In this document: one piece after another, positions 18,700 to 49,745 of the stretch
Layout of the letters: the number at the start of each line of letters is the position of its first letter
Numbering within the stretch: the first letter of the stretch is position 1
Origin: Octopus bimaculoides
Taxonomy: Eukaryota
Direction: 5' to 3'
Length of the DNA: 64,000 bases
NCBI RefSeq assembly: GCF_001194135.2
Contig: NC_068991.1
Coordinates: forward strand, 66,155,621-66,219,620
The notes under the pieces: generated by a model
Told to the model about the DNA's origin: nothing
Databases searched by the model: none
Seen by the model: only the letters and a program-made list of their open reading frames with translations
Translations under genes and position numbers: made by a program

Positions 18700-19833
18700 G
18701 ATGAGCAGGTATCTTGGTGTAGGAAGGCGAACTCATCACATACCCCCTCAGGTAGGAGACTCCCTGCTTGATCTGTAGAAAAGGTGTAGGTAGAAATTCC
18801 ATAAGATGTACCCAGTGTGAGCTATGGACACATAAGAGGTGCAGCAGCATCAAAGGAAGATTAACCGAGAAGACAGCTTTCGTGTGTGGCAGATGCACAG
18901 GGGCAATAAACACCACAGATGCTCAGAAAACAGATTCCATTACATGCCAGGGGGAGAAACTAGAAGTAGTTGAAAGCTTCCGCTACCTAGGTGATCAAGT
19001 TAGTAGTGGGGGTGGATGCTCAGAGAGTGTTACCACTAGAAGAAGAATAGTCTGGGCAAAGTTTAGAAAACTTCTACTCCTACTGGTGACAAAGGGGCTC
19101 TCGCTCAGAGTGAAAGGTAGATTGTACGATGCATGTGTGTGAACTGCCATGCTTCACGGCAGTGAAACATGGTCCATGACTGCGGAGGACATGCATAGGC
19201 TTGAAAGAAATGAAGCTAGCATGATCGGCTGGATGTGTAATGTCAGTGTGCATGCACGACAATGTAAGCGCCCTGAGAGGAATGTTGGACATAAGAAGCA
19301 TCGGATGTGGTGTGCAGGAGAGATGTTTGTGCTGGTATGGTCATGTACTGCGGATGGATGAGGAGAGCTGTGTGACGAAGTGCCACACCCAAACAGTTGA
19401 AGGAATCCGGGGTAGAGGTAGACCCAGGAAGACATGGGATGAGGTGGTCAAGCATGACTTTAGAATGTTGGGCCTCACAGAGGCAATGACGAAAGACCGA
19501 AACCTCTGGAAATATGCTGTGACTAAGAAGACCCGGCAAATAAAGTGAGTTCACGGCTGTATCCTACACTAGTTTTGCATAATCAGCCCCAGCCCATTCA
19601 AAAGTACCTTGGATCGTAGGGCAACTTGCTGTGCTTGAGGAGACCTATTGAGTCAAGTACATGAACGTCAAAATAAAAATCAAATGGAAATTGTAGTTTT
19701 GATACCCATACTGGTGGCACGTAAAAAGCACCAACCGATCGTGGCCATTGCCAGCCTCGTCTGGCTCCTGTGCTGGTGGCACTTAAAAAGCACCCACTAC
19801 ACTCACGGAGTGGGCATTAGGAAGGGCATCCGG
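18700..19833 (+). mobile_element. 5'-truncated, frameshifted RTE-clade LINE: ORF2 C-terminus and 3' UTR running into a gap
   Basis: ORF pieces 18768-19142, 19149-19361 and 19240-19548 with LEVVESFRYLGD, RVKGRLYDACV, LHGSETW, WYGHVLRM, GRGRPRKTW; 3' UTR continues to GGAAGGGCATCC. Confidence 0.93.
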
Positions 19834-20099
19834 NNNNNNNNNNNNNNNNNNNNNNNNNNNNNNNNNNNNNNNNNNNNNNNNNNNNNNNNNNNNNNNNNNN
19901 NNNNNNNNNNNNNNNNNNNNNNNNNNNNNNNNNNNNNNNNNNNNNNNNNNNNNNNNNNNNNNNNNNNNNNNNNNNNNNNNNTATATATATACATACACAC
20001 ACATACAGGTGTATACATGCAAGCATACATACATACATATATATACGTTTTATCTTACTCTCTTGCTCTTTCTCTGTATATGCATAGGACTGAGATATC

Positions 20100-24769: not shown

Positions 24770-25285
24770 CACTACATTCAACTTCCTTCATCTCCCACTC
24801 TCTTTTTGCATTCATGTGAGCTTACCTGGCCATTCACCCTATCCATTCCTGTGTACTACTTCACTTATATACACCACCTTCAAACTTGAGGGTATGCCTG
24901 ACGCATCCTCATCAACTTCTCTCTTTCCTCTCCTCTCTCTTTTTTTTCTGAGGAGTCGTGTATCTTGTCTACCGTAAAACACCTCTTTCTGTCCTTCCAT
25001 CACACTCTAGCCTCTCATCACATGGCACAAAACCACCTCCCTCATTACTCCTTTCCCCCAGTTGAAGTGTCTTGCAAAATACTTAGTGACTTCACTGGTG
25101 CTGGTCATACATGAAAAGCACCCAATACTCTCTGTAAAGTGATAAGCAGTAAGAAGGGCATCCAGCCATAGAAACTATGCGAAAACAGACAGTAAAGCTT
25201 GGCACAGTCATCTGACTTGTTAATTCCTGTCAAACTGTCCAACCCATGCCAGCATGGAAAGTGGACGTTAAATGAATGATGAGAT
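24770..25285 (+). mobile_element. RTE-tail-related repeat, longer old subfamily
   Basis: AAAAGCACCC, GAAGGGCATCCAGCC, CCAACCCATGCCAGCATGGAAAGTGGACGTTAAA. Confidence 0.7.
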
Positions 25286-25303
25286 TATATATGTAGGCAT
25301 TAA

Positions 25304-30829: not shown

Positions 30830-31289
30830 ACCAAGAATCACCATTGTCTACATCTCCACCCATGTTCATACACTTATGAAACCACCCACCTAGCCATCTC
30901 TGGTTCTTTGTCCCGATTTCTTTATCCATCTTCATATACCTTGAGAGTATCCCCTCCACCAGCTTTTGTCCTCTACAGCAAGACACCGGTTCCTGTCCTA
31001 TTCTGTTTTAGCTTCTCAGTATCTGGCATAAAGCCACTTCCCTCAATAATGTAACCCCACTCTGTTAAGGGGTCTTGTCATGTAAATTACTTGATGACCT
31101 CACTAGTACTGGTTCTGCGAAAAAAAACAGCACACACCTTAAAGTGGTTGGTATTAGGAAAGACATCCAGCCATAGAAACTTTGCCTGGGCAGATGTTAA
31201 AGCTTAAGGCAGCTTTCTAGGATCTCTTGTAGGATTCTGTCAAACTGTCCAACCCATTCTAGTCTGGAATACGGCTGTTGAATGATGAT
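30830..31289 (+). mobile_element. RTE-tail-related repeat, longer old subfamily
   Basis: GTGGTTGGTATTAGGAAAGACATCCAGCCATAGAAAC and CTGTCCAACCCAT. Confidence 0.65.
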
Positions 31290-31293
31290 TTAA

Positions 31294-31509
31294 CTCTAGG
31301 ATTCAGATCATTGTCAAATGTAATGATTATTTATTCACATCGTTTGAAATTAATCACGCATTATCTTGTAGCTCAGTGTTTTCAATGATGTGATTGTTTA
31401 TTTTTAGAATGACATTATAGGGTAGGTGTGAGAGGCCTGATTTGTTCAGATTGAACATAAAACAGATAGAATAAATGAGGTGGATATGGCCAACTTAAAT
31501 GCTAAAGGG
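31294..31509. mobile_element. piggyBac-like MITE family 2 (TIR CCCTTTAGCATT)
   Basis: TTAA at 31290-31293; ends AATGCTAAAGGG; colinear with 33704-33922 and 48741-48950. Confidence 0.78.
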
Positions 31510-37996: not shown

Positions 37997-38238
37997 TTCA
38001 TCATCATCGTTTGATATCTGTTTTCCATGCTGGCATGGGTTGGATGGTTCGACTGGGGTCTGGGAAGCCAGGCGGCTGCACCAGGCTCCAATCTGATGTG
38101 GCACTGTTTCTACAGCTGGATGCCCTTCCTAATGCCAACCACTCCGAGAGTGTAGTGAGTTCTTTCTACGTGCCACCAGCATGGGGCCAGAGGGGGCTGG
38201 CATCAACCACGTTTGGATGGTGCTTTTTATGTACCACC
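37997..38238 (-). mobile_element. RTE 3'-end copy
   Basis: Reverse complement of the 1533-1796 and 48281-48547 family. Confidence 0.85.
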
Positions 38239-39221: not shown

Positions 39222-39293
39222 ATGGCAAAAATGATGTACGGACTGATGCTATGCTTGTGTGGGCTCCCAATGCTGATCTATGTGAATCAAGAA
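39222..39293 (+). CDS. RCOR: CoREST exon 3, ELM2 (DGKNDVRTDAMLVWAPNADLCESR)
   Basis: ttcaag acceptor, A|gtaagt donor, conserved MLVWxP; follows a 27.3-kb intron; phase 1-1. Confidence 0.92.
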
Positions 39294-39659
39294 GTAAGTA
39301 GTGACAATCTATTTACAAATAATTTCTAGAAGGGCACTATTTGGAAAAAAAAAAAAAAAAGGGCTGAGAGGGGAAGGAAAAATTGTCCAAGCCAACCAGC
39401 CTGTCATTATAAATACATGATCAATGTTTGGGTTGCTGGCAAATGTTGGTTCATGTACTTCAGTGTTCCTTGAACTGTAAACATCTCTCTTAATCCTTTC
39501 TTTATTATATTTCTAACCAAAATAAACTCCTTATGTGTTTCAGTTAAATGAAAAAATAATTATGAATTTAGACTGGTGTCATAAGACAACTTTTTTTTTT
39601 ATTTATTGACATACAAATGATTTTTGGACAAAATTTAAAGTGCAGAAGCCTAGTGGACC

Positions 39660-39799
39660 TTAGAAATAATACATTTCTAAACCTCTGAGAGAGATTTATG
39701 CAGTAGTGATATGTTGAAGTAGTTGTATGATGTGAACTTCTTCAACGTATCACTACTGCATAAATCTCTCTGAGAGATTTAGAAATATATTATTTCTAA
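39660..39799. repeat. Near-perfect inverted repeat, 60-bp arms extending to ~65 bp with a 10-nt loop
   Basis: 39660-39719 versus reverse complement of 39740-39799: 4 differences. Confidence 0.95.
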
Positions 39800-39836
39800 T
39801 TTTGAAATCAGTGAATGTATTTCACTAGAATAATTA

Positions 39837-39975
39837 TATGTTTACAAGAGCTTGACAGGCATCTTTGACTAGCAGGTCATGCTACTCCAGACTGATGATG
39901 AGCAAAGACTCAGAAATATGTCTCTGGATGCAGGCTTAGCTGGGTGGAGGTGCTTGTCTCCCCCTTGTAAACATA
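39837..39975 (+). ncRNA. Minimal type I hammerhead ribozyme on a long helix I (Penelope/retrozyme type)
   Basis: tccaga-CTGATGA-tgag(caaaga)ctca-GAAA-tatg-TC-tctgga at 39886-39928; helix I extends irregularly to tatgtttacaag/cttgtaaacata. Confidence 0.82.
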
Positions 39976-41443
39976 AGGACACAGGAAATGTGTCAAGGCC
40001 GACAGGAAGTGGTGCGGCTTCCTAGGTCTAAACAAACAGTAGTATTATTCCCTTCAAGTTGACAGCATACAACTACTTCCTAGTGAACCTATTCTAAAAA
40101 AGAGAAACATGAAAAATAGTATTTTTGTGAGAAAAATTTCTTTAATAGATTTATCTGAGAAGCTTTTACATATCATCAATAAATGAATAAAAAAATAGTT
40201 TTATGAAACCAGTCTGAATTCATTGATTATTTTAGAATTTAATTAAAATGTATAAGGGTGTAATGTAATTAGAAACACAGAAACGATTGTGTTTAATAGG
40301 AAACAGATTTCAAACAGTCTGCATGCACCAAGCTTTAGAAATGACATTTTCATGTTCAATTTTAGGTTAGATTAATATCTGAGATGAGTTATTAATAAGA
40401 TTATAATTTTTCAGACTATTAATCTCATCCTTAGAGATGAAGCATTTTCCAGTATTTATTTGTATGCTACATTCCATTAAAGCTTAGTGGGCAAGAACAT
40501 TATTACTCCTGATTTAGTAATAAAGGTTCCTAGTTCAAATCCTGTATGGCATACACATCCAGAGATAAAACATCTGATGGGTTAGGGATCAACCTGATTG
40601 AAATGTGTAGCTTGTAAATCTGAAAAACCTTTTCATCTAAAGAGAAGGTTAATTGTCTGAAAAATTTTAATCTTATTAGGTTAGATGTCTTACAACTGGG
40701 TACTTTAGTAAATGCTAATCACACTAACGAGAGGTTATTTTCAAAGATGAATAGAACGGTTAACTTTGATGGTATTGGTTGAATGAGTTGGCATTCCAGC
40801 ATGTGCTATTTGTTGTGAGCCATTGCATCTATGAAATGCTATTTCCTAAGATTCTACTGTGCTAAAAGCAGCTTGCTATTACATGCTAAACTTCTTCGGT
40901 CACCACTCATTGTCCAGTCATATCACATGTCCTTATTAGTTCACTCATCTTTCCTGCAGTCTCATGCTGAATTACATTCTCAGTCTCAATATTCTCTGTC
41001 TTTCATACAAGTTAACATAATATTCAACAGATCATGCACGACTCATTTCTCTACTCCTTCTGCAGATATGTATTTGATGCCCATATCTTGCGACCATTGA
41101 GCAAGACTACTTCTCTGATGTACCTAGGATATTGTTTTCTATTATCAATTAAGGTCTTATTAGCCTTTAATCTGTTAATGTTTCAATATTAGACAACCTT
41201 TTTTTAGGTCTGGAACATTTTTTGCAGTTCTTTGGCATCTATCAATGAGAAGCAGGTCACTAGCAGATAAAATTTTTTAGGAACATTTGATCTTGATATT
41301 GTAATTGTATCCAATATACTGGTCTTATTGATAAATAATTTTAAATATAATAGATTTCAGTGACCTCTTTAGGGGTATGCTCTGCTTCTTGCATTTGATG
41401 CCCAAAATTGTAATTTCTTTTTCTTTGTATCTCTTTTACTTAA

Positions 41444-43530: not shown

Positions 43531-43583
43531 TTGATGATTATGTTACTATCGCAAAAGAGAAACATGGCTACAACATGGAGCAG
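43531..43583 (+). CDS. RCOR: CoREST exon 4, ELM2 (IDDYVTIAKEKHGYNMEQ)
   Basis: ttgcag acceptor, CAG|gtaatg donor, AKEKHGYNMEQ motif, phase 1-0. Confidence 0.96.
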
Positions 43584-46914: not shown

Positions 46915-48280
46915 GTAAGTGGAAGTTTGTTGTATTACAAGCCATATTGAAATTAACTTCAAGAATCTACTTCAAGAATTATGCATCTGAAATAAGATAT
47001 AATTGACTAGTTAATTGACTTGGCGTTAATTATTAGATTTATGGTATGAAGATAGCTGGATGAAAACCTGTGTGAGCTACAATTTTAGTCATCCTGTCCT
47101 TATGTTAAGGTCAGTTTATAAGATTTAGGAAAATGTGTTCCCTATATTTTAACCTTTTGAGTGTGAATTTTGTGTTCAACAAATTGTTTGGGTTATATAT
47201 CTTTTTATTTTTGTTTTATTTTTTTTTATTTTCATAATGTTCTACCCTTTATAAAAAATGGATACCATCTTAAGATTTAGTAGTAGCAACTATGAATTTG
47301 AAGAAAAAGTGGCTGCAGCAAATGAAAAATTGCAACAAGCGTAACTGTGTGGCGGACATGGAATTGGATGTTGCAATTTGTGATAGTGAAACGACCTGGA
47401 CATCAGTAATGAAAGTGATGATGAATTAAAAGGCAGAAAGAATGGAGTGTGGAATGAAGACTTTTAAAATATTTCTTTTCCAAATTTTTTTCTTCCCCCT
47501 TTTGAAAATACTGATCCCAGTCAGTTTACCCGAAGACTTAAAAAACCCACTCATTATTTTGCAAGACTAATTGCTGTGGAATTAATTTTACAATGAAAAA
47601 GTTTGTCCTTCTTTTTCCTGTTACAGGAAAAAAAAAAGGAGGACAAACTATGGACTCCTGCACCACTGAATGAAATTAGTACATTATTTTTGCTTTAGAT
47701 ACAATCATACACATTAGGAAGTTATATAATTTATTTTTATAAAATATATTTTCAAATTTACCTGGTCTTCAGTTTGTCAATTTACCTGTTTGATGAGTGA
47801 CAGATTCTGCTTAATTATATACAAGTTAATCTTTTATTGTTTTGGTGTGTGTATTTGTGTATATGTAATTTTTTGGTATTTTACTTCAATTGAACATCCA
47901 GCTATGTGTACAATTCTTTGAAGTGTTATACTACAGTCTTACTCCTGCTGAATATTGGCTTATAATTCTTGATATGGTGATCATCATTTAGGCAAAGTTT
48001 AAATAATTTTACATTTCACTGATTATTGTGTGCATTTACCTATAATAGAAGTAGTTTTTGTGACAAACATATTGATATAGATCTATATAAGAATTTTTTA
48101 AGTCGCTCTAAACACCACTTTGATATATAAAATCTAAAAGGTTAAACTTGTTTTATAAAAACATGAAATNNNNNNNNNNNNNNNNNNNNNNNNNNNNNNN
48201 NNNNNNNNNNNNNNNNNNNNNNNNNNNNNNNNNNNNNNNNNNNNNNNNNNNNNNNNNNNNNNNNNNNNNNNNNNNNNNNN

Positions 48281-48547
48281 ACTGGCTTGTGCGGGTGGCA
48301 CATAAAAGACACCATTTCGAGCGTGGCCGTTGCCAGTATCGCCTGACTGGCCTTCGTGCAGGTGACACGTAAAAGCACCAACTACACTCTCTGAGTGGTT
48401 GGCGTTAGGAAGGGCATCCAGCTGTAGAAACTCTGCCAAATTTAGATTGGAGCCTGGTGTTGCCATCCGGTTTCACCAGTCCTCAGTCAAGTCGTCCAAC
48501 CCATGCTAGCATGGAAAGCGGACGTTAAACGATGATGATGATGATGA
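48281..48547 (+). mobile_element. Young RTE 3'-end copy; its 5' part is in a gap
   Basis: Closely similar to 1533-1796; (GAT)n tail. Confidence 0.88.
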
Positions 48548-49499: not shown

Positions 49500-49745
49500 C
49501 ACTGCCAGCCATACATACAGGCTTGTCCTTTGCAGGTGTTAATGCCACATAAAATACATTTGTATTGGTTCCATATAAATGCACCTGAGCCAGTGGCACA
49601 TAAAGAGCACCCGGCATCCAACTGTAGAAGCAATGCCACACAGACACTTGGAATCTGGACAGCTTCCTGGCTGACCAGCTCCTGTCAGACCGTCCAACAC
49701 ATACCAGCGTGGGAAATGGATGTTAAATGATGATGATGGTGATGG
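49500..49745 (+). mobile_element. Diverged RTE 3'-end copy with internal deletion
   Basis: GTGGCACATAAAGAGCACCC, GGCATCC and a GAT tail. Confidence 0.7.

What the first reader, a model, noticed from the sequence alone, without database searches (positions are those of the whole stretch)
39837..39975. Intact minimal hammerhead ribozyme on the sense strand of CoREST intron 3, capping a ~50-bp rod
Seen: helix I tccaga/tctgga; core CUGAUGA (39892-39898); helix II UGAG/CUCA; GAAA; a self-complementary helix III segment AUAUGU; cleavage after C39922. Helix I continues through ctagc/gctgg, gacaggcatct/aggtgcttgtc (11 bp) and tatgtttacaag/cttgtaaacata (12 bp perfect), which makes chance unlikely. Established: hammerheads with a vestigial palindromic helix III occur in Penelope-like elements and metazoan retrozymes and often cleave as dimers; exapted intronic hammerheads exist in amniotes. 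Inference: it could cut RCOR pre-mRNA co-transcriptionally or release a stable intronic RNA.
Basis: partly seen in the sequence, partly recalled or inferred. Interest (0 to 1): 0.75.

Follow-up and report, generated by a model that had tools for sequence, protein, structure and literature searches.

The report
Octopus intronic hammerhead from a retrozyme insertion
The hammerhead ribozyme motif is real, but it belongs to a 418-bp mobile-element insertion (a retrozyme-like retroelement) that landed in this CoREST intron only in the Octopus bimaculoides lineage, so it is an ordinary transposon relic rather than a conserved gene-regulating ribozyme.

Summary
Window 39886-39928 (+) holds a complete type I hammerhead (HHR). 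Helix I is 6 bp, followed by CUGAUGA, a 4-bp helix II with loop CAAAGA, GAAA, a 1-bp helix III with tetraloop UAUG, and C17 at 39922. It caps a 139-nt rod in the third coding-sequence (CDS) intron of the CoREST/RCOR gene, on the sense strand.

A covariance model built only from four experimentally validated retrozyme hammerheads finds it at 32.4 bits, E 2e-6. Rfam models do not find it.

The motif is not exapted. It lies in a 418-bp insertion (39661-40078) flanked by a 12-bp target-site duplication. O. sinensis and O. vulgaris have the empty site in the same intron. Argonauta and cuttlefish have short introns without it.

The insertion is slightly more than one copy of a ~336-nt unit, preceded by an inverted 80-nt fragment. 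That fragment spans the unit's end-to-start junction, which implies a circular or tandem RNA template. This is also the inverted-5'-copy layout typical of Penelope-like elements (PLEs).

The unit is highly self-paired, and only on the hammerhead strand.

Best reading: a dispersed monomer of a non-LTR retrozyme, mobilised by a PLE. Its single hammerhead has a vestigial helix III and is expected to cleave poorly. Copy number and activity were not testable here.

The parts
39649..39660 (+). Left copy of the 12-bp target-site duplication, CCTAGTGGACCT
   Evidence: It is identical to the single copy at the empty site in O. sinensis (L001 35943-35954). O. vulgaris carries the same 12-mer with one base difference.
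39661..39739 (-). Inverted 5' fragment of the element. It is the reverse complement of unit positions 312-335 joined to unit positions 1-55, so it spans the unit's end-to-start junction. Together with the start of the direct copy it forms the near-perfect hairpin at 39660-39800.
   Evidence: Self-BLAST gives 39714-39660 against unit 1-55 at 92.7% and 39739-39716 against unit 312-335 at 91.7%. The hairpin folds equally well on both strands, as expected for a DNA-level inverted duplication.
39740..40078 (+). Direct copy, slightly longer than one unit, of a ~336-nt retrozyme-like unit. CTTC is present at both ends.
   Evidence: GC content is 40%. The circular fold is -111 kcal/mol, 64% paired, z = -7.4. 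The + strand folds at -116.7 kcal/mol against -91.7 for the - strand.
39837..39975 (+). 139-nt rod: an extended helix I with the hammerhead at its tip
   Evidence: -61.4 kcal/mol, z = -6.6. The - strand reaches only -44.0 kcal/mol. There are 7 G.U pairs on the + strand.
39880..39885 (+). Distal helix I (UGC pairing with GCA at 39930-39932 in the predicted fold) and the UAC bulge 5' of helix I (loop 1 region)
   Evidence: These bases align to the loop-1 flank of the axolotl HHR (GCUGC against GCUAC) in the R1 match.
39886..39891 (+). Helix I, 5' strand, UCCAGA
   Evidence: Six Watson-Crick pairs with 39923-39928.
39892..39898 (+). Catalytic core C3-A9, CUGAUGA
39899..39912 (+). Helix II UGAG/CUCA with 6-nt loop 2, CAAAGA. 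The 10.1-11.1 pair is U-A.
   Evidence: Loop 2 differs by one base from the axolotl Ax330 loop CAAAAA.
39913..39922 (+). G12 A13 A14, A15.1-[UAUG]-U16.1 (vestigial helix III) and C17. The predicted scissile bond is 39922/39923.
   Evidence: GAAAUAUGUC compares with axolotl Ax330 GAAACAUGUC.
39923..39928 (+). Helix I, 3' strand, UCUGGA
40079..40090 (+). Right copy of the target-site duplication, CCTAGTGAACCT (one substitution)
39222..39293 (+). RCOR coding exon 3 (upstream exon). The 5' splice site is 629 nt upstream of the predicted cleavage site.
   Evidence: tblastn with O. bimaculoides RCOR3 (P0121).
43531..43583 (+). RCOR coding exon 4 (downstream exon). The intron is 4237 nt.

Best explanation
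The hammerhead is the ribozyme of a small non-autonomous retroelement of the metazoan non-LTR retrozyme kind (unit about 336 nt).

Proposed life cycle (inferred). Such elements are transcribed as multimers. The type I hammerhead cuts them into monomers, mainly by pairing with a neighbouring copy because its own helix III is only 1 bp. The monomers are ligated into highly self-paired circular RNAs. These are reverse-transcribed and integrated by the machinery of an autonomous Penelope-like element.

What is shown. One such event inserted 418 bp into the third CDS intron of CoREST, in sense orientation. This happened in the O. bimaculoides lineage after its split from O. sinensis and O. vulgaris, and it duplicated 12 bp of target. 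The insertion is slightly more than one unit plus an inverted junction-spanning fragment. It is not a host feature.

Consequence here (inferred). As a lone monomer with a weak A/U-rich helix III and a U-A pair at 10.1-11.1, the ribozyme is expected to cleave the RCOR pre-mRNA rarely, if at all. It probably has no host function.

Shown versus inferred. Shown: motif, fold, insertion polymorphism between species, target-site duplication, unit structure, and profile similarity to validated retrozyme hammerheads. Inferred: the circular RNA stage, mobilisation by a Penelope-like element, multi-copy status, and weak activity.
For: Motif and fold
- Motif and rod are present and non-random.
- The catalytically competent fold lies 1.2 kcal/mol above the minimum free energy.

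Similarity to validated retrozyme hammerheads
- Model R1 was built only from the coral, mussel and two axolotl retrozyme hammerheads that were shown to self-cleave (supplement of PMC7229834).
- R1 matches 39881-39933 end to end at 32.4 bits, E 1.9e-6 over 232 kb. The next best match is 12.7 bits, E about 1.
- The architecture equals the published 'canonical' metazoan type I: helix I 6 bp, helix II 4 bp, helix III 1-2 bp with a small palindromic loop (PMC4209133).
- It is closest to axolotl HHR_Amex1: single-pair helix III, palindromic tetraloop, loop 2 CAAAAA.

Lineage-specific insertion
- The window is O. bimaculoides (L003 is 100% identical).
- Window 39661-40078 is missing from O. sinensis and O. 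vulgaris, which carry one copy of the 12-mer that flanks it on both sides in O. bimaculoides.
- The right flank is collinear for 1.5 kb at 94% identity, inside the same exon 3-exon 4 intron.

Unit structure and RNA-level features
- The inverted 5' fragment contains unit end (312-335) and unit start (1-55) adjacent to each other. The direct copy carries CTTC at both ends. This requires a template longer than one unit, either circular or tandem.
- It also matches the 'inverted 5'-truncated copy adjacent to the upstream pLTR' described for Penelope-like insertions (PMC8557442).
- Unit size, GC content below 50%, a target-site duplication longer than 4 bp and a highly self-paired circle match the published retrozyme definition.
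- The structure is strand-specific. The rod folds at -61.4 against -44.0 kcal/mol and the unit at -116.7 against -91.7. The DNA-level inverted duplication next to it folds equally on both strands.

Genomic setting
- Dispersed monomers are common, and about 43% of copies in Xenopus are intronic (bioRxiv 10.64898/2026.07.22.740005).
Against: - No second copy of the unit or of the hammerhead was found in about 250 kb of cephalopod sequence available here: window, L001, L002, L004, L005, L025. Multi-copy and tandem status are therefore untested.
- No Rfam hammerhead family matches, even at E<=10.
- The 10.1-11.1 pair is U-A instead of the highly conserved G-C.
- The insertion ends do not coincide with the ribozyme cleavage site, so processing by the ribozyme is not documented by this copy.
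- No Penelope-like reverse transcriptase was identified in the window.
- Cephalopod retrozymes were not found in the literature library.
Confidence: 0.75

Rival explanations
1. It is an exapted intronic ribozyme. The hammerhead cleaves CoREST pre-mRNA co-transcriptionally, or releases a stable intronic RNA, as a regulatory device. This would resemble the conserved intronic hammerheads of amniote RECK, CTCL and DTNB.
For: - It is in sense orientation, 629 nt downstream of the 5' splice site.
- The core is intact and the competent fold is energetically accessible.
- There is precedent for domesticated intronic hammerheads derived from retroelement hammerheads (PMC6155905).
Against: - It is absent from the orthologous intron of O. 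sinensis and O. vulgaris (empty site with a single copy of the duplicated 12-mer). It is also absent from Argonauta and cuttlefish.
- It is a single copy with a 1-bp helix III. The equivalent axolotl monomer cleaves 6% in 1 h and needs a dimer.
- The self-duplex of AUAUGU is only about -0.8 kcal/mol.
- The 10.1-11.1 pair is U-A.
- Retrozyme copies in introns are common and mildly selected against.
Confidence: 0.07
2. It is a 5'-truncated copy or solo pseudo-LTR of an autonomous Penelope-like element, or a hammerhead-bearing SINE-like retroposon of the Schistosoma Sm-alpha type. It would then not be a retrozyme that cycles through circular RNA.
For: - Most dispersed single hammerheads in metazoan genomes were interpreted as truncated Penelope-like elements.
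- The inverted 5' copy is a Penelope-like signature.
- Retrozymes are themselves related to pseudo-LTRs.
- Only one copy was seen here.
Against: - The junction-spanning inverted fragment shows that unit position 335 is followed directly by unit position 1. The repeating template was therefore about 336 nt, with no room for a 2.5-kb ORF.
- The hammerhead is of the 'canonical' type, with a 6-bp helix I, a 4-bp helix II and loop features that the literature assigns to retrozymes. Penelope-like elements carry minimal variants with a long helix II and no helix III.
- No reverse-transcriptase or endonuclease coding sequence lies within the duplication-bounded insertion.
- No poly(A) or simple-repeat tail is visible at the 3' end.
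Confidence: 0.13
3. It is a chance hammerhead-like motif at the tip of an unrelated foldback or MITE-like hairpin.
For: - There is no Rfam hit and no other copies in hand.
- The genome is rich in hairpins, including the one immediately upstream.
- The sequence-only pattern is expected 0.43 times per window.
Against: - With the helices required, there were 0 hits in 30 Mb of simulated sequence.
- None of 19 sequence-only matches in the metagenome collection folds.
- An independent model built from validated ribozymes gives E 2e-6, including loop 1 and loop 2 flanks that were not part of the descriptor.
- The rod is strand-specific, with 7 G.U pairs on the hammerhead strand.
- The 139-nt hairpin has no target-site duplication of its own. 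The duplication bounds the larger 418-bp element.
Confidence: 0.03

Closest known systems
Metazoan non-LTR retrozymes (Cervera and de la Pena 2020, PMC7229834), in particular the axolotl/newt 330-bp repeat with HHR_Amex1 (the 'satellite 2' hammerhead)
   Same: - Type I hammerhead with a 6-bp helix I, a 4-bp helix II and a 6-nt loop 2 (CAAAAA in axolotl, CAAAGA here).
- Helix III is a single A-U pair closing a near-palindromic tetraloop (CAUG in axolotl, UAUG here), followed by C17.
- The unit is about 330 nt, GC content is below 50%, and the RNA is highly self-paired.
- The target-site duplication is longer than 4 bp.
- Dispersed monomer copies occur.
   Different: - Only one copy was seen, and no tandem array is in hand.
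- The 10.1-11.1 pair is U-A rather than G-C.
- Helix III is palindromic only through G.U pairs.
- An inverted junction-spanning fragment sits at the 5' end.
- The host is a cephalopod. I found no report of retrozymes in that group in the searched library.
Penelope-like elements and their pseudo-LTR hammerheads (Cervera and de la Pena 2014, PMC4209133; Craig et al. 2021, PMC8557442)
   Same: - Hammerhead-bearing retroelement.
- The insertion layout includes an inverted 5'-truncated copy and more-than-unit-length copies.
- The hammerhead is thought to act as a dimer.
   Different: - There is no RT/GIY-YIG ORF and the unit is only about 336 nt.
- Metazoan Penelope-like hammerheads are 'minimal': long helix II, an extra base 5' of helix II, and no helix III or loop-loop contacts. 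This one is of the canonical type.
Exapted intronic hammerheads of amniotes (Rfam HH9 and HH10; the RECK, CTCL and DTNB introns)
   Same: - Type I hammerhead of retroelement ancestry.
- It lies on the sense strand of an intron of a conserved gene.
   Different: The amniote hammerheads are conserved at orthologous positions across classes. This one is a lineage-specific insertion that is absent from congeneric species, and it gives no Rfam HH9 or HH10 match.
Schistosoma Sm-alpha SINE-like hammerhead repeat
   Same: It is a non-autonomous repeat of about 335 nt with a type I hammerhead. From my own memory of that sequence, it also has a UAC-type bulge in helix I and a CAAAUA-like loop 2.
   Different: - The Sm-alpha hammerhead has a stable helix III and cleaves fast as a monomer.
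- Sm-alpha is described as a SINE-like retroposon.
- I recalled the sequence from memory and did not align it here.

Membership tests
Hammerhead ribozyme, type I | Conserved core C3 U4 G5 A6 N7 G8 A9 / G12 A13 A14 / A15.1-U16.1 / H17, in the order helix I 5' strand, core, helix II, GAAA, helix III, H17, helix I 3' strand | tested here: met
   CUGAUGA 39892-39898, GAA 39913-39915, A39916...U39921, C39922.
Hammerhead ribozyme, type I | Helices I and II formed by Watson-Crick or wobble pairing around the core | tested here: met
   Helix I pairs 6 of 6 and helix II pairs 4 of 4. The fold with both helices costs 1.2 kcal/mol above the minimum free energy.
Hammerhead ribozyme, type I | G10.1-C11.1 pair at the base of helix II (highly conserved, not absolute) | tested here: not met
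   The pair is U39899-A39912. The axolotl HHR_Amex2, which has a U.U mismatch here, still cleaves.
Hammerhead ribozyme, type I | Stable helix III in the monomer | tested here: not met
   There is only A15.1-U16.1 closing UAUG. This is the known dimer-dependent variant. The AUAUGU self-duplex is about -0.8 kcal/mol.
Hammerhead ribozyme, type I | Match to the curated Rfam hammerhead covariance models (Hammerhead_1, HH9, HH10, etc.) | tested here: not met
   There was no hammerhead match at the gathering score or at E<=10, even on a 76-nt stretch.
Hammerhead ribozyme, type I | Profile similarity to experimentally validated type I retrozyme hammerheads | tested here: met
   Model R1, built from coral, mussel and two axolotl sequences, scores 32.4 bits, E 1.9e-6, over the full model length. 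It is the only match below E about 1 in 232 kb. One N was added to loop 2 of three training sequences so that loop lengths aligned.
Hammerhead ribozyme, type I | Site-specific self-cleavage that leaves 2',3'-cyclic phosphate and 5'-OH ends | not testable with these tools
   This needs in vitro transcription or RNA end mapping.
Metazoan non-LTR retrozyme | Short unit (about 150-450 bp) carrying a type I hammerhead, with GC content below 50% | tested here: met
   The unit is about 336 nt and 40% GC.
Metazoan non-LTR retrozyme | Head-to-tail tandem repeats, multi-copy in the genome | tested here: inconclusive
   Only one locus is available. It holds more than one unit plus a junction-spanning fragment, which implies a template longer than one unit. 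No further copy was found in about 250 kb. The whole genome could not be searched.
Metazoan non-LTR retrozyme | Target-site duplication longer than the 4 bp of plant LTR retrozymes; no LTR, primer-binding site or polypurine tract | tested here: met
   The duplication is 12 bp and the site is empty in two congeners. No terminal direct repeats were found within the insertion.
Metazoan non-LTR retrozyme | Highly self-paired circular RNA of unit length | tested here: inconclusive
   The predicted circular fold is 64% paired, z = -7.4, and specific to the + strand. The existence of the circular RNA itself is not testable here.
Autonomous Penelope-like element | ORF encoding a telomerase-like reverse transcriptase and a GIY-YIG endonuclease between pseudo-LTRs | tested here: not met
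   The insertion is 418 bp with no long ORF. The longest stop-free stretch is 50 codons, and it has no relatives.
Exapted (domesticated) intronic hammerhead | Conservation of the motif at the orthologous intronic position across species | tested here: not met
   The site is empty in O. sinensis and O. vulgaris. Intron 3 is 221 nt in Argonauta and 949 nt in cuttlefish, without a hammerhead.

The most novel reading that the evidence does not exclude
Octopods harbour a still-active retrozyme family, the first in cephalopods, that circulates as ~336-nt hammerhead circular RNAs. This young sense-strand copy gives O. bimaculoides a lineage-specific self-cleavage site, or a stable structured intronic RNA, in the pre-mRNA of CoREST, a neuronal chromatin co-repressor.
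Probability: 0.1. Interest if true: 0.6.

Novelty: new member of a known kind. Interest (0 to 1): 0.3.

Why it matters
Hammerhead-bearing retrozymes and their link to Penelope-like elements are established in cnidarians, bivalves, insects and lower vertebrates. I found no report for cephalopods.

This locus is a clean example with a filled site in one species and an empty site in two others. The boundaries, a 12-bp target-site duplication and a junction-spanning inverted fragment are all visible. It therefore documents integration from a circular or multimeric template with Penelope-type architecture.

For the host gene it is most likely neutral. Its main value is as a seed for cataloguing the family in octopus genomes and transcriptomes. 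It is also a caution: an intact intronic hammerhead is not evidence of exaptation without orthologue conservation.

Tried and rejected
1. Rfam at gathering thresholds over the window, and at E<=10 over 801 nt and 76 nt. No hammerhead family was reported. Only weak C/D-box snoRNA and miRNA-precursor noise appeared.
2. Looking for further copies through spurious ORFs across the element. The + strand 50-aa stretch had no candidates among 5.8 billion proteins. The - strand stretch, searched against 1.84 billion representatives, gave one unrelated repetitive protein.
3. A metagenome-wide scan for the core plus loop 2 plus helix III pattern. It gave 19 matches, all without the helices, so all are chance. 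No relatives were found, but the scan is useful as a negative control.
4. Using a LINE fragment of the window (18768-19142) to pull more O. bimaculoides DNA. The relatives are UniRef or MetaClust entries with no contig on record. One ENA contig (L025) is not octopus and has no copy.
5. BLAST and nhmmer of the unit against the window and all loci. Only self-matches were found.
6. A MITE reading of the rod was rejected. The rod has no target-site duplication of its own and folds far better on one strand.
7. An alternative core register (shifted by 3 nt in CUGAUGAUGA) was rejected. It puts A at position 3 and leaves an extra base before G12.
8. The EMBO Rep 2010 paper on intronic hammerheads and the Cell 2006 structure paper are not held in the library. 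Comparison with the Schistosoma and human HH9 sequences therefore rests on memory and is marked as such.

Full report
**What is there.**
- The hammerhead occupies 39886-39928.
- Helix I is UCCAGA/UCUGGA (6 bp).
- The core is C3-A9, CUGAUGA (39892-39898).
- Helix II is UGAG/CUCA with loop CAAAGA.
- G12 A13 A14 follow.
- A15.1 and U16.1 close the tetraloop UAUG.
- C17 is at 39922, and the 3' strand of helix I follows.
- Upstream of helix I there is a UAC bulge and a further UGC/GCA stem.
- The stem continues outward to a perfect 12-bp closing helix.

**Folding of the rod.** The 139 nt fold at -61.4 kcal/mol, z = -6.6 against dinucleotide shuffles. A structure with helices I and II formed and the core open costs only 1.2 kcal/mol more than the minimum.

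**Is it more than chance?** The bare sequence pattern is expected 0.43 times per window. Once the helices are required the picture changes.
- A strict descriptor found nothing in 30 Mb of simulated sequence, both strands.
- It found only this site in the window and in five cephalopod loci.
- The same sequence pattern occurs 19 times in the whole JGI metagenome collection, and none of those has both helices.

**Rfam versus an independent model.** Rfam gave no hammerhead match at any threshold. I therefore made an independent test.
- I took the four retrozyme constructs shown to self-cleave in PMC7229834: coral Amil224, mussel Mg353, axolotl Ax353 and Ax330 (supplementary table).
- I aligned their hammerheads and built covariance model R1 without the octopus sequence. 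One N was added to loop 2 of three training sequences so that loop lengths aligned.
- R1 matches 39881-39933 over its full length at 32.4 bits, E 1.9e-6 in 232 kb. Everything else is at E about 1 or worse.
- The closest architecture is axolotl HHR_Amex1. The octopus GAAAUAUGUC compares with GAAACAUGUC, loop 2 CAAAGA with CAAAAA, and the 5' flank GCUAC with GCUGC.
- This is the published 'canonical' metazoan type I hammerhead: helix I 6 bp, helix II 4 bp, helix III 1-2 bp with a small palindromic loop (PMC4209133).

**Deviations from the canonical motif.**
- The 10.1-11.1 pair is U-A instead of G-C.
- Helix III is palindromic only through two G.U pairs (self-duplex about -0.8 kcal/mol).

**Gene context.**
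- tblastn with RCOR proteins places CoREST/RCOR on the + strand.
- The coding exons are at 11628-11741, 11881-11940, 39222-39293 and 43531-43583, with more downstream.
- The motif is in the 4237-nt third CDS intron, on the sense strand, 629 nt from the 5' splice site.
- The window is Octopus bimaculoides. Locus L003, fetched through the O. bimaculoides RCOR3 protein, is 100% identical.

**The decisive comparison.** I fetched the orthologous genes of O. sinensis (L001), O. vulgaris (L002), Argonauta hians (L004) and the cuttlefish Acanthosepion pharaonis (L005).
- In O. sinensis and O. vulgaris the same intron is present.
- The right flank is collinear with O. bimaculoides for 1.5 kb at 94% identity.
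- Window 39661-40078 is missing from both species.
- They read ...AAAGTGCAGAAGCCTAGTGGACCT|ATTCTAAAAAAG... (O. sinensis shown; O. vulgaris differs by one base in the 12-mer).
- O. bimaculoides has CCTAGTGGACCT on the left (39649-39660) and CCTAGTGAACCT on the right (40079-40090) of a 418-bp insert.
- This is a filled site against an empty site with a 12-bp target-site duplication. It is a transposition event in the O. bimaculoides lineage.
- In Argonauta the intron is 221 nt and in cuttlefish 949 nt. Neither has a hammerhead.

**Anatomy of the insert.** Self-comparison shows two parts.
- The direct copy is 39740-40078. It is a unit of about 336 nt (39745-40079), with CTTC present at both ends.
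- The inverted fragment is 39661-39739. It is the reverse complement of unit positions 312-335 (22 of 24 bases) joined directly to unit positions 1-55 (51 of 55 bases).
- The inverted fragment therefore contains the end-to-start junction of the unit. That junction can only come from a template longer than one unit, meaning a circular RNA or a tandem transcript.
- Together with the start of the direct copy, this fragment forms the near-perfect hairpin at 39660-39800. That hairpin is what produced the weak miRNA-precursor matches in Rfam.

**Properties of the unit.**
- It has 40% GC.
- As a circle it folds at -111 kcal/mol with 64% of bases paired, z = -7.4.
- The structure is strand-specific.
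  - The rod folds at -61.4 kcal/mol on the hammerhead strand against -44.0 on the other, with 7 against 2 G.U pairs.
  - The unit folds at -116.7 against -91.7 kcal/mol.
  - The DNA-level inverted duplication next to it folds equally on both strands.
- This is what is expected if the rod is an RNA structure of the element in hammerhead polarity.

**Interpretation.** These features fit the definition of metazoan non-LTR retrozymes in PMC7229834.
- They are 150-450-bp units with type I hammerheads and low GC.
- Their target-site duplications are longer than 4 bp.
- Their circular RNAs are highly self-paired.
- Penelope-like elements are their likely mobilisers. A 2026 preprint relates retrozymes to the pseudo-LTRs of Penelope-like elements. 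It also reports evenly dispersed monomers, with about 43% of Xenopus copies in introns.
- I therefore read the finding as a dispersed, slightly-more-than-monomeric retrozyme copy.
- The steps from transcription through hammerhead processing, circularisation and Penelope-type integration are inferred from the family, not shown here.

**Expected activity of this copy.** It is alone in the intron. The equivalent axolotl monomer cleaves 6% in 1 h and needs a dimer. I therefore expect little cleavage of RCOR pre-mRNA and no host function. Low-level cleavage is not excluded.

**What is missing.** I could not search the octopus genome.
- No second copy occurs in the roughly 250 kb of cephalopod DNA I could reach.
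- Several indirect routes to more sequence failed.
- Multi-copy status, tandem arrays, covariation within the family and expression as circular RNA remain open. The next steps address them.
- I found no report of hammerheads or retrozymes in cephalopods in the searchable library. That library is incomplete.

**Verdict.** The object is a new member, in a new host group, of a known kind. Interest is modest.

Noticed in passing
window 39660-39800: A 140-nt near-perfect hairpin lies immediately upstream of the rod. It gives sub-threshold matches to many miRNA-precursor models (best 47.5 bits against a gathering score of 139.7). It is explained here as the inverted 5' fragment of the element paired with the start of the direct copy. 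As a long sense-strand intronic duplex it could still be a substrate for Dicer or for A-to-I editing.
   Followed up: partly
L001 34664-35929 and L002 34123-35387 (corresponding to window ~39638): O. sinensis and O. vulgaris carry an insertion of about 1.27 kb relative to O. bimaculoides, about 20 nt upstream of the retrozyme target site. This short stretch of the intron was hit independently in both lineages. The insert was not characterised.
   Followed up: no
window 18768-19142 (+): A 124-aa ORF is the 3' fragment of a LINE-like element with a PHD-type zinc finger. Its nearest relatives are O. bimaculoides 'uncharacterized' UniRef proteins, some with an RVT_1 domain.
   Followed up: partly
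L025 (ENA ERZ25067570 ctg41511, 143.8 kb): A contig from a 'metagenome' assembly encodes a protein 48% identical to the octopus LINE fragment, and also an integrase (rve) ORF. It is probably eukaryotic (invertebrate) DNA in a metagenome.
   Followed up: no
window 1540-1796 and 48288-48546; also 2180-2355, 25114-25289, 31140-31299, 49665-49744: A dispersed SINE-like repeat family (repeat families D9, D11, D13, D15). Copies are 60-93% identical and end in GATGATGATG-type simple repeats. Inverted copies lie at 5197-5329 and 37998-38165.
   Followed up: no
window ~2808-2817, 5134-5145, 6396-6620, ~19830-19980, ~48250-48360: Runs of N (assembly gaps) are embedded in (TA)n microsatellites. The large 'repeat families' D1 and D2 are artefacts of these N and TA runs.
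   Followed up: no
RCOR intron 3 in L001-L005: The same intron is 4237 nt in O. bimaculoides, about 5.0 kb in O. sinensis and O. vulgaris, 221 nt in Argonauta hians and 949 nt in Acanthosepion pharaonis. In Octopus most of its length is lineage-specific repeat insertion.
   Followed up: partly
L001 37741-37791 (-) and L002 37134-37184 (-): A weak match to hammerhead model R1 (11.8 bits, E 1.7) is conserved between O. sinensis and O. vulgaris. Its core is degenerate (CUGAAAA ... AAAACAUGUC). It is at noise level and may be nothing.
   Followed up: no
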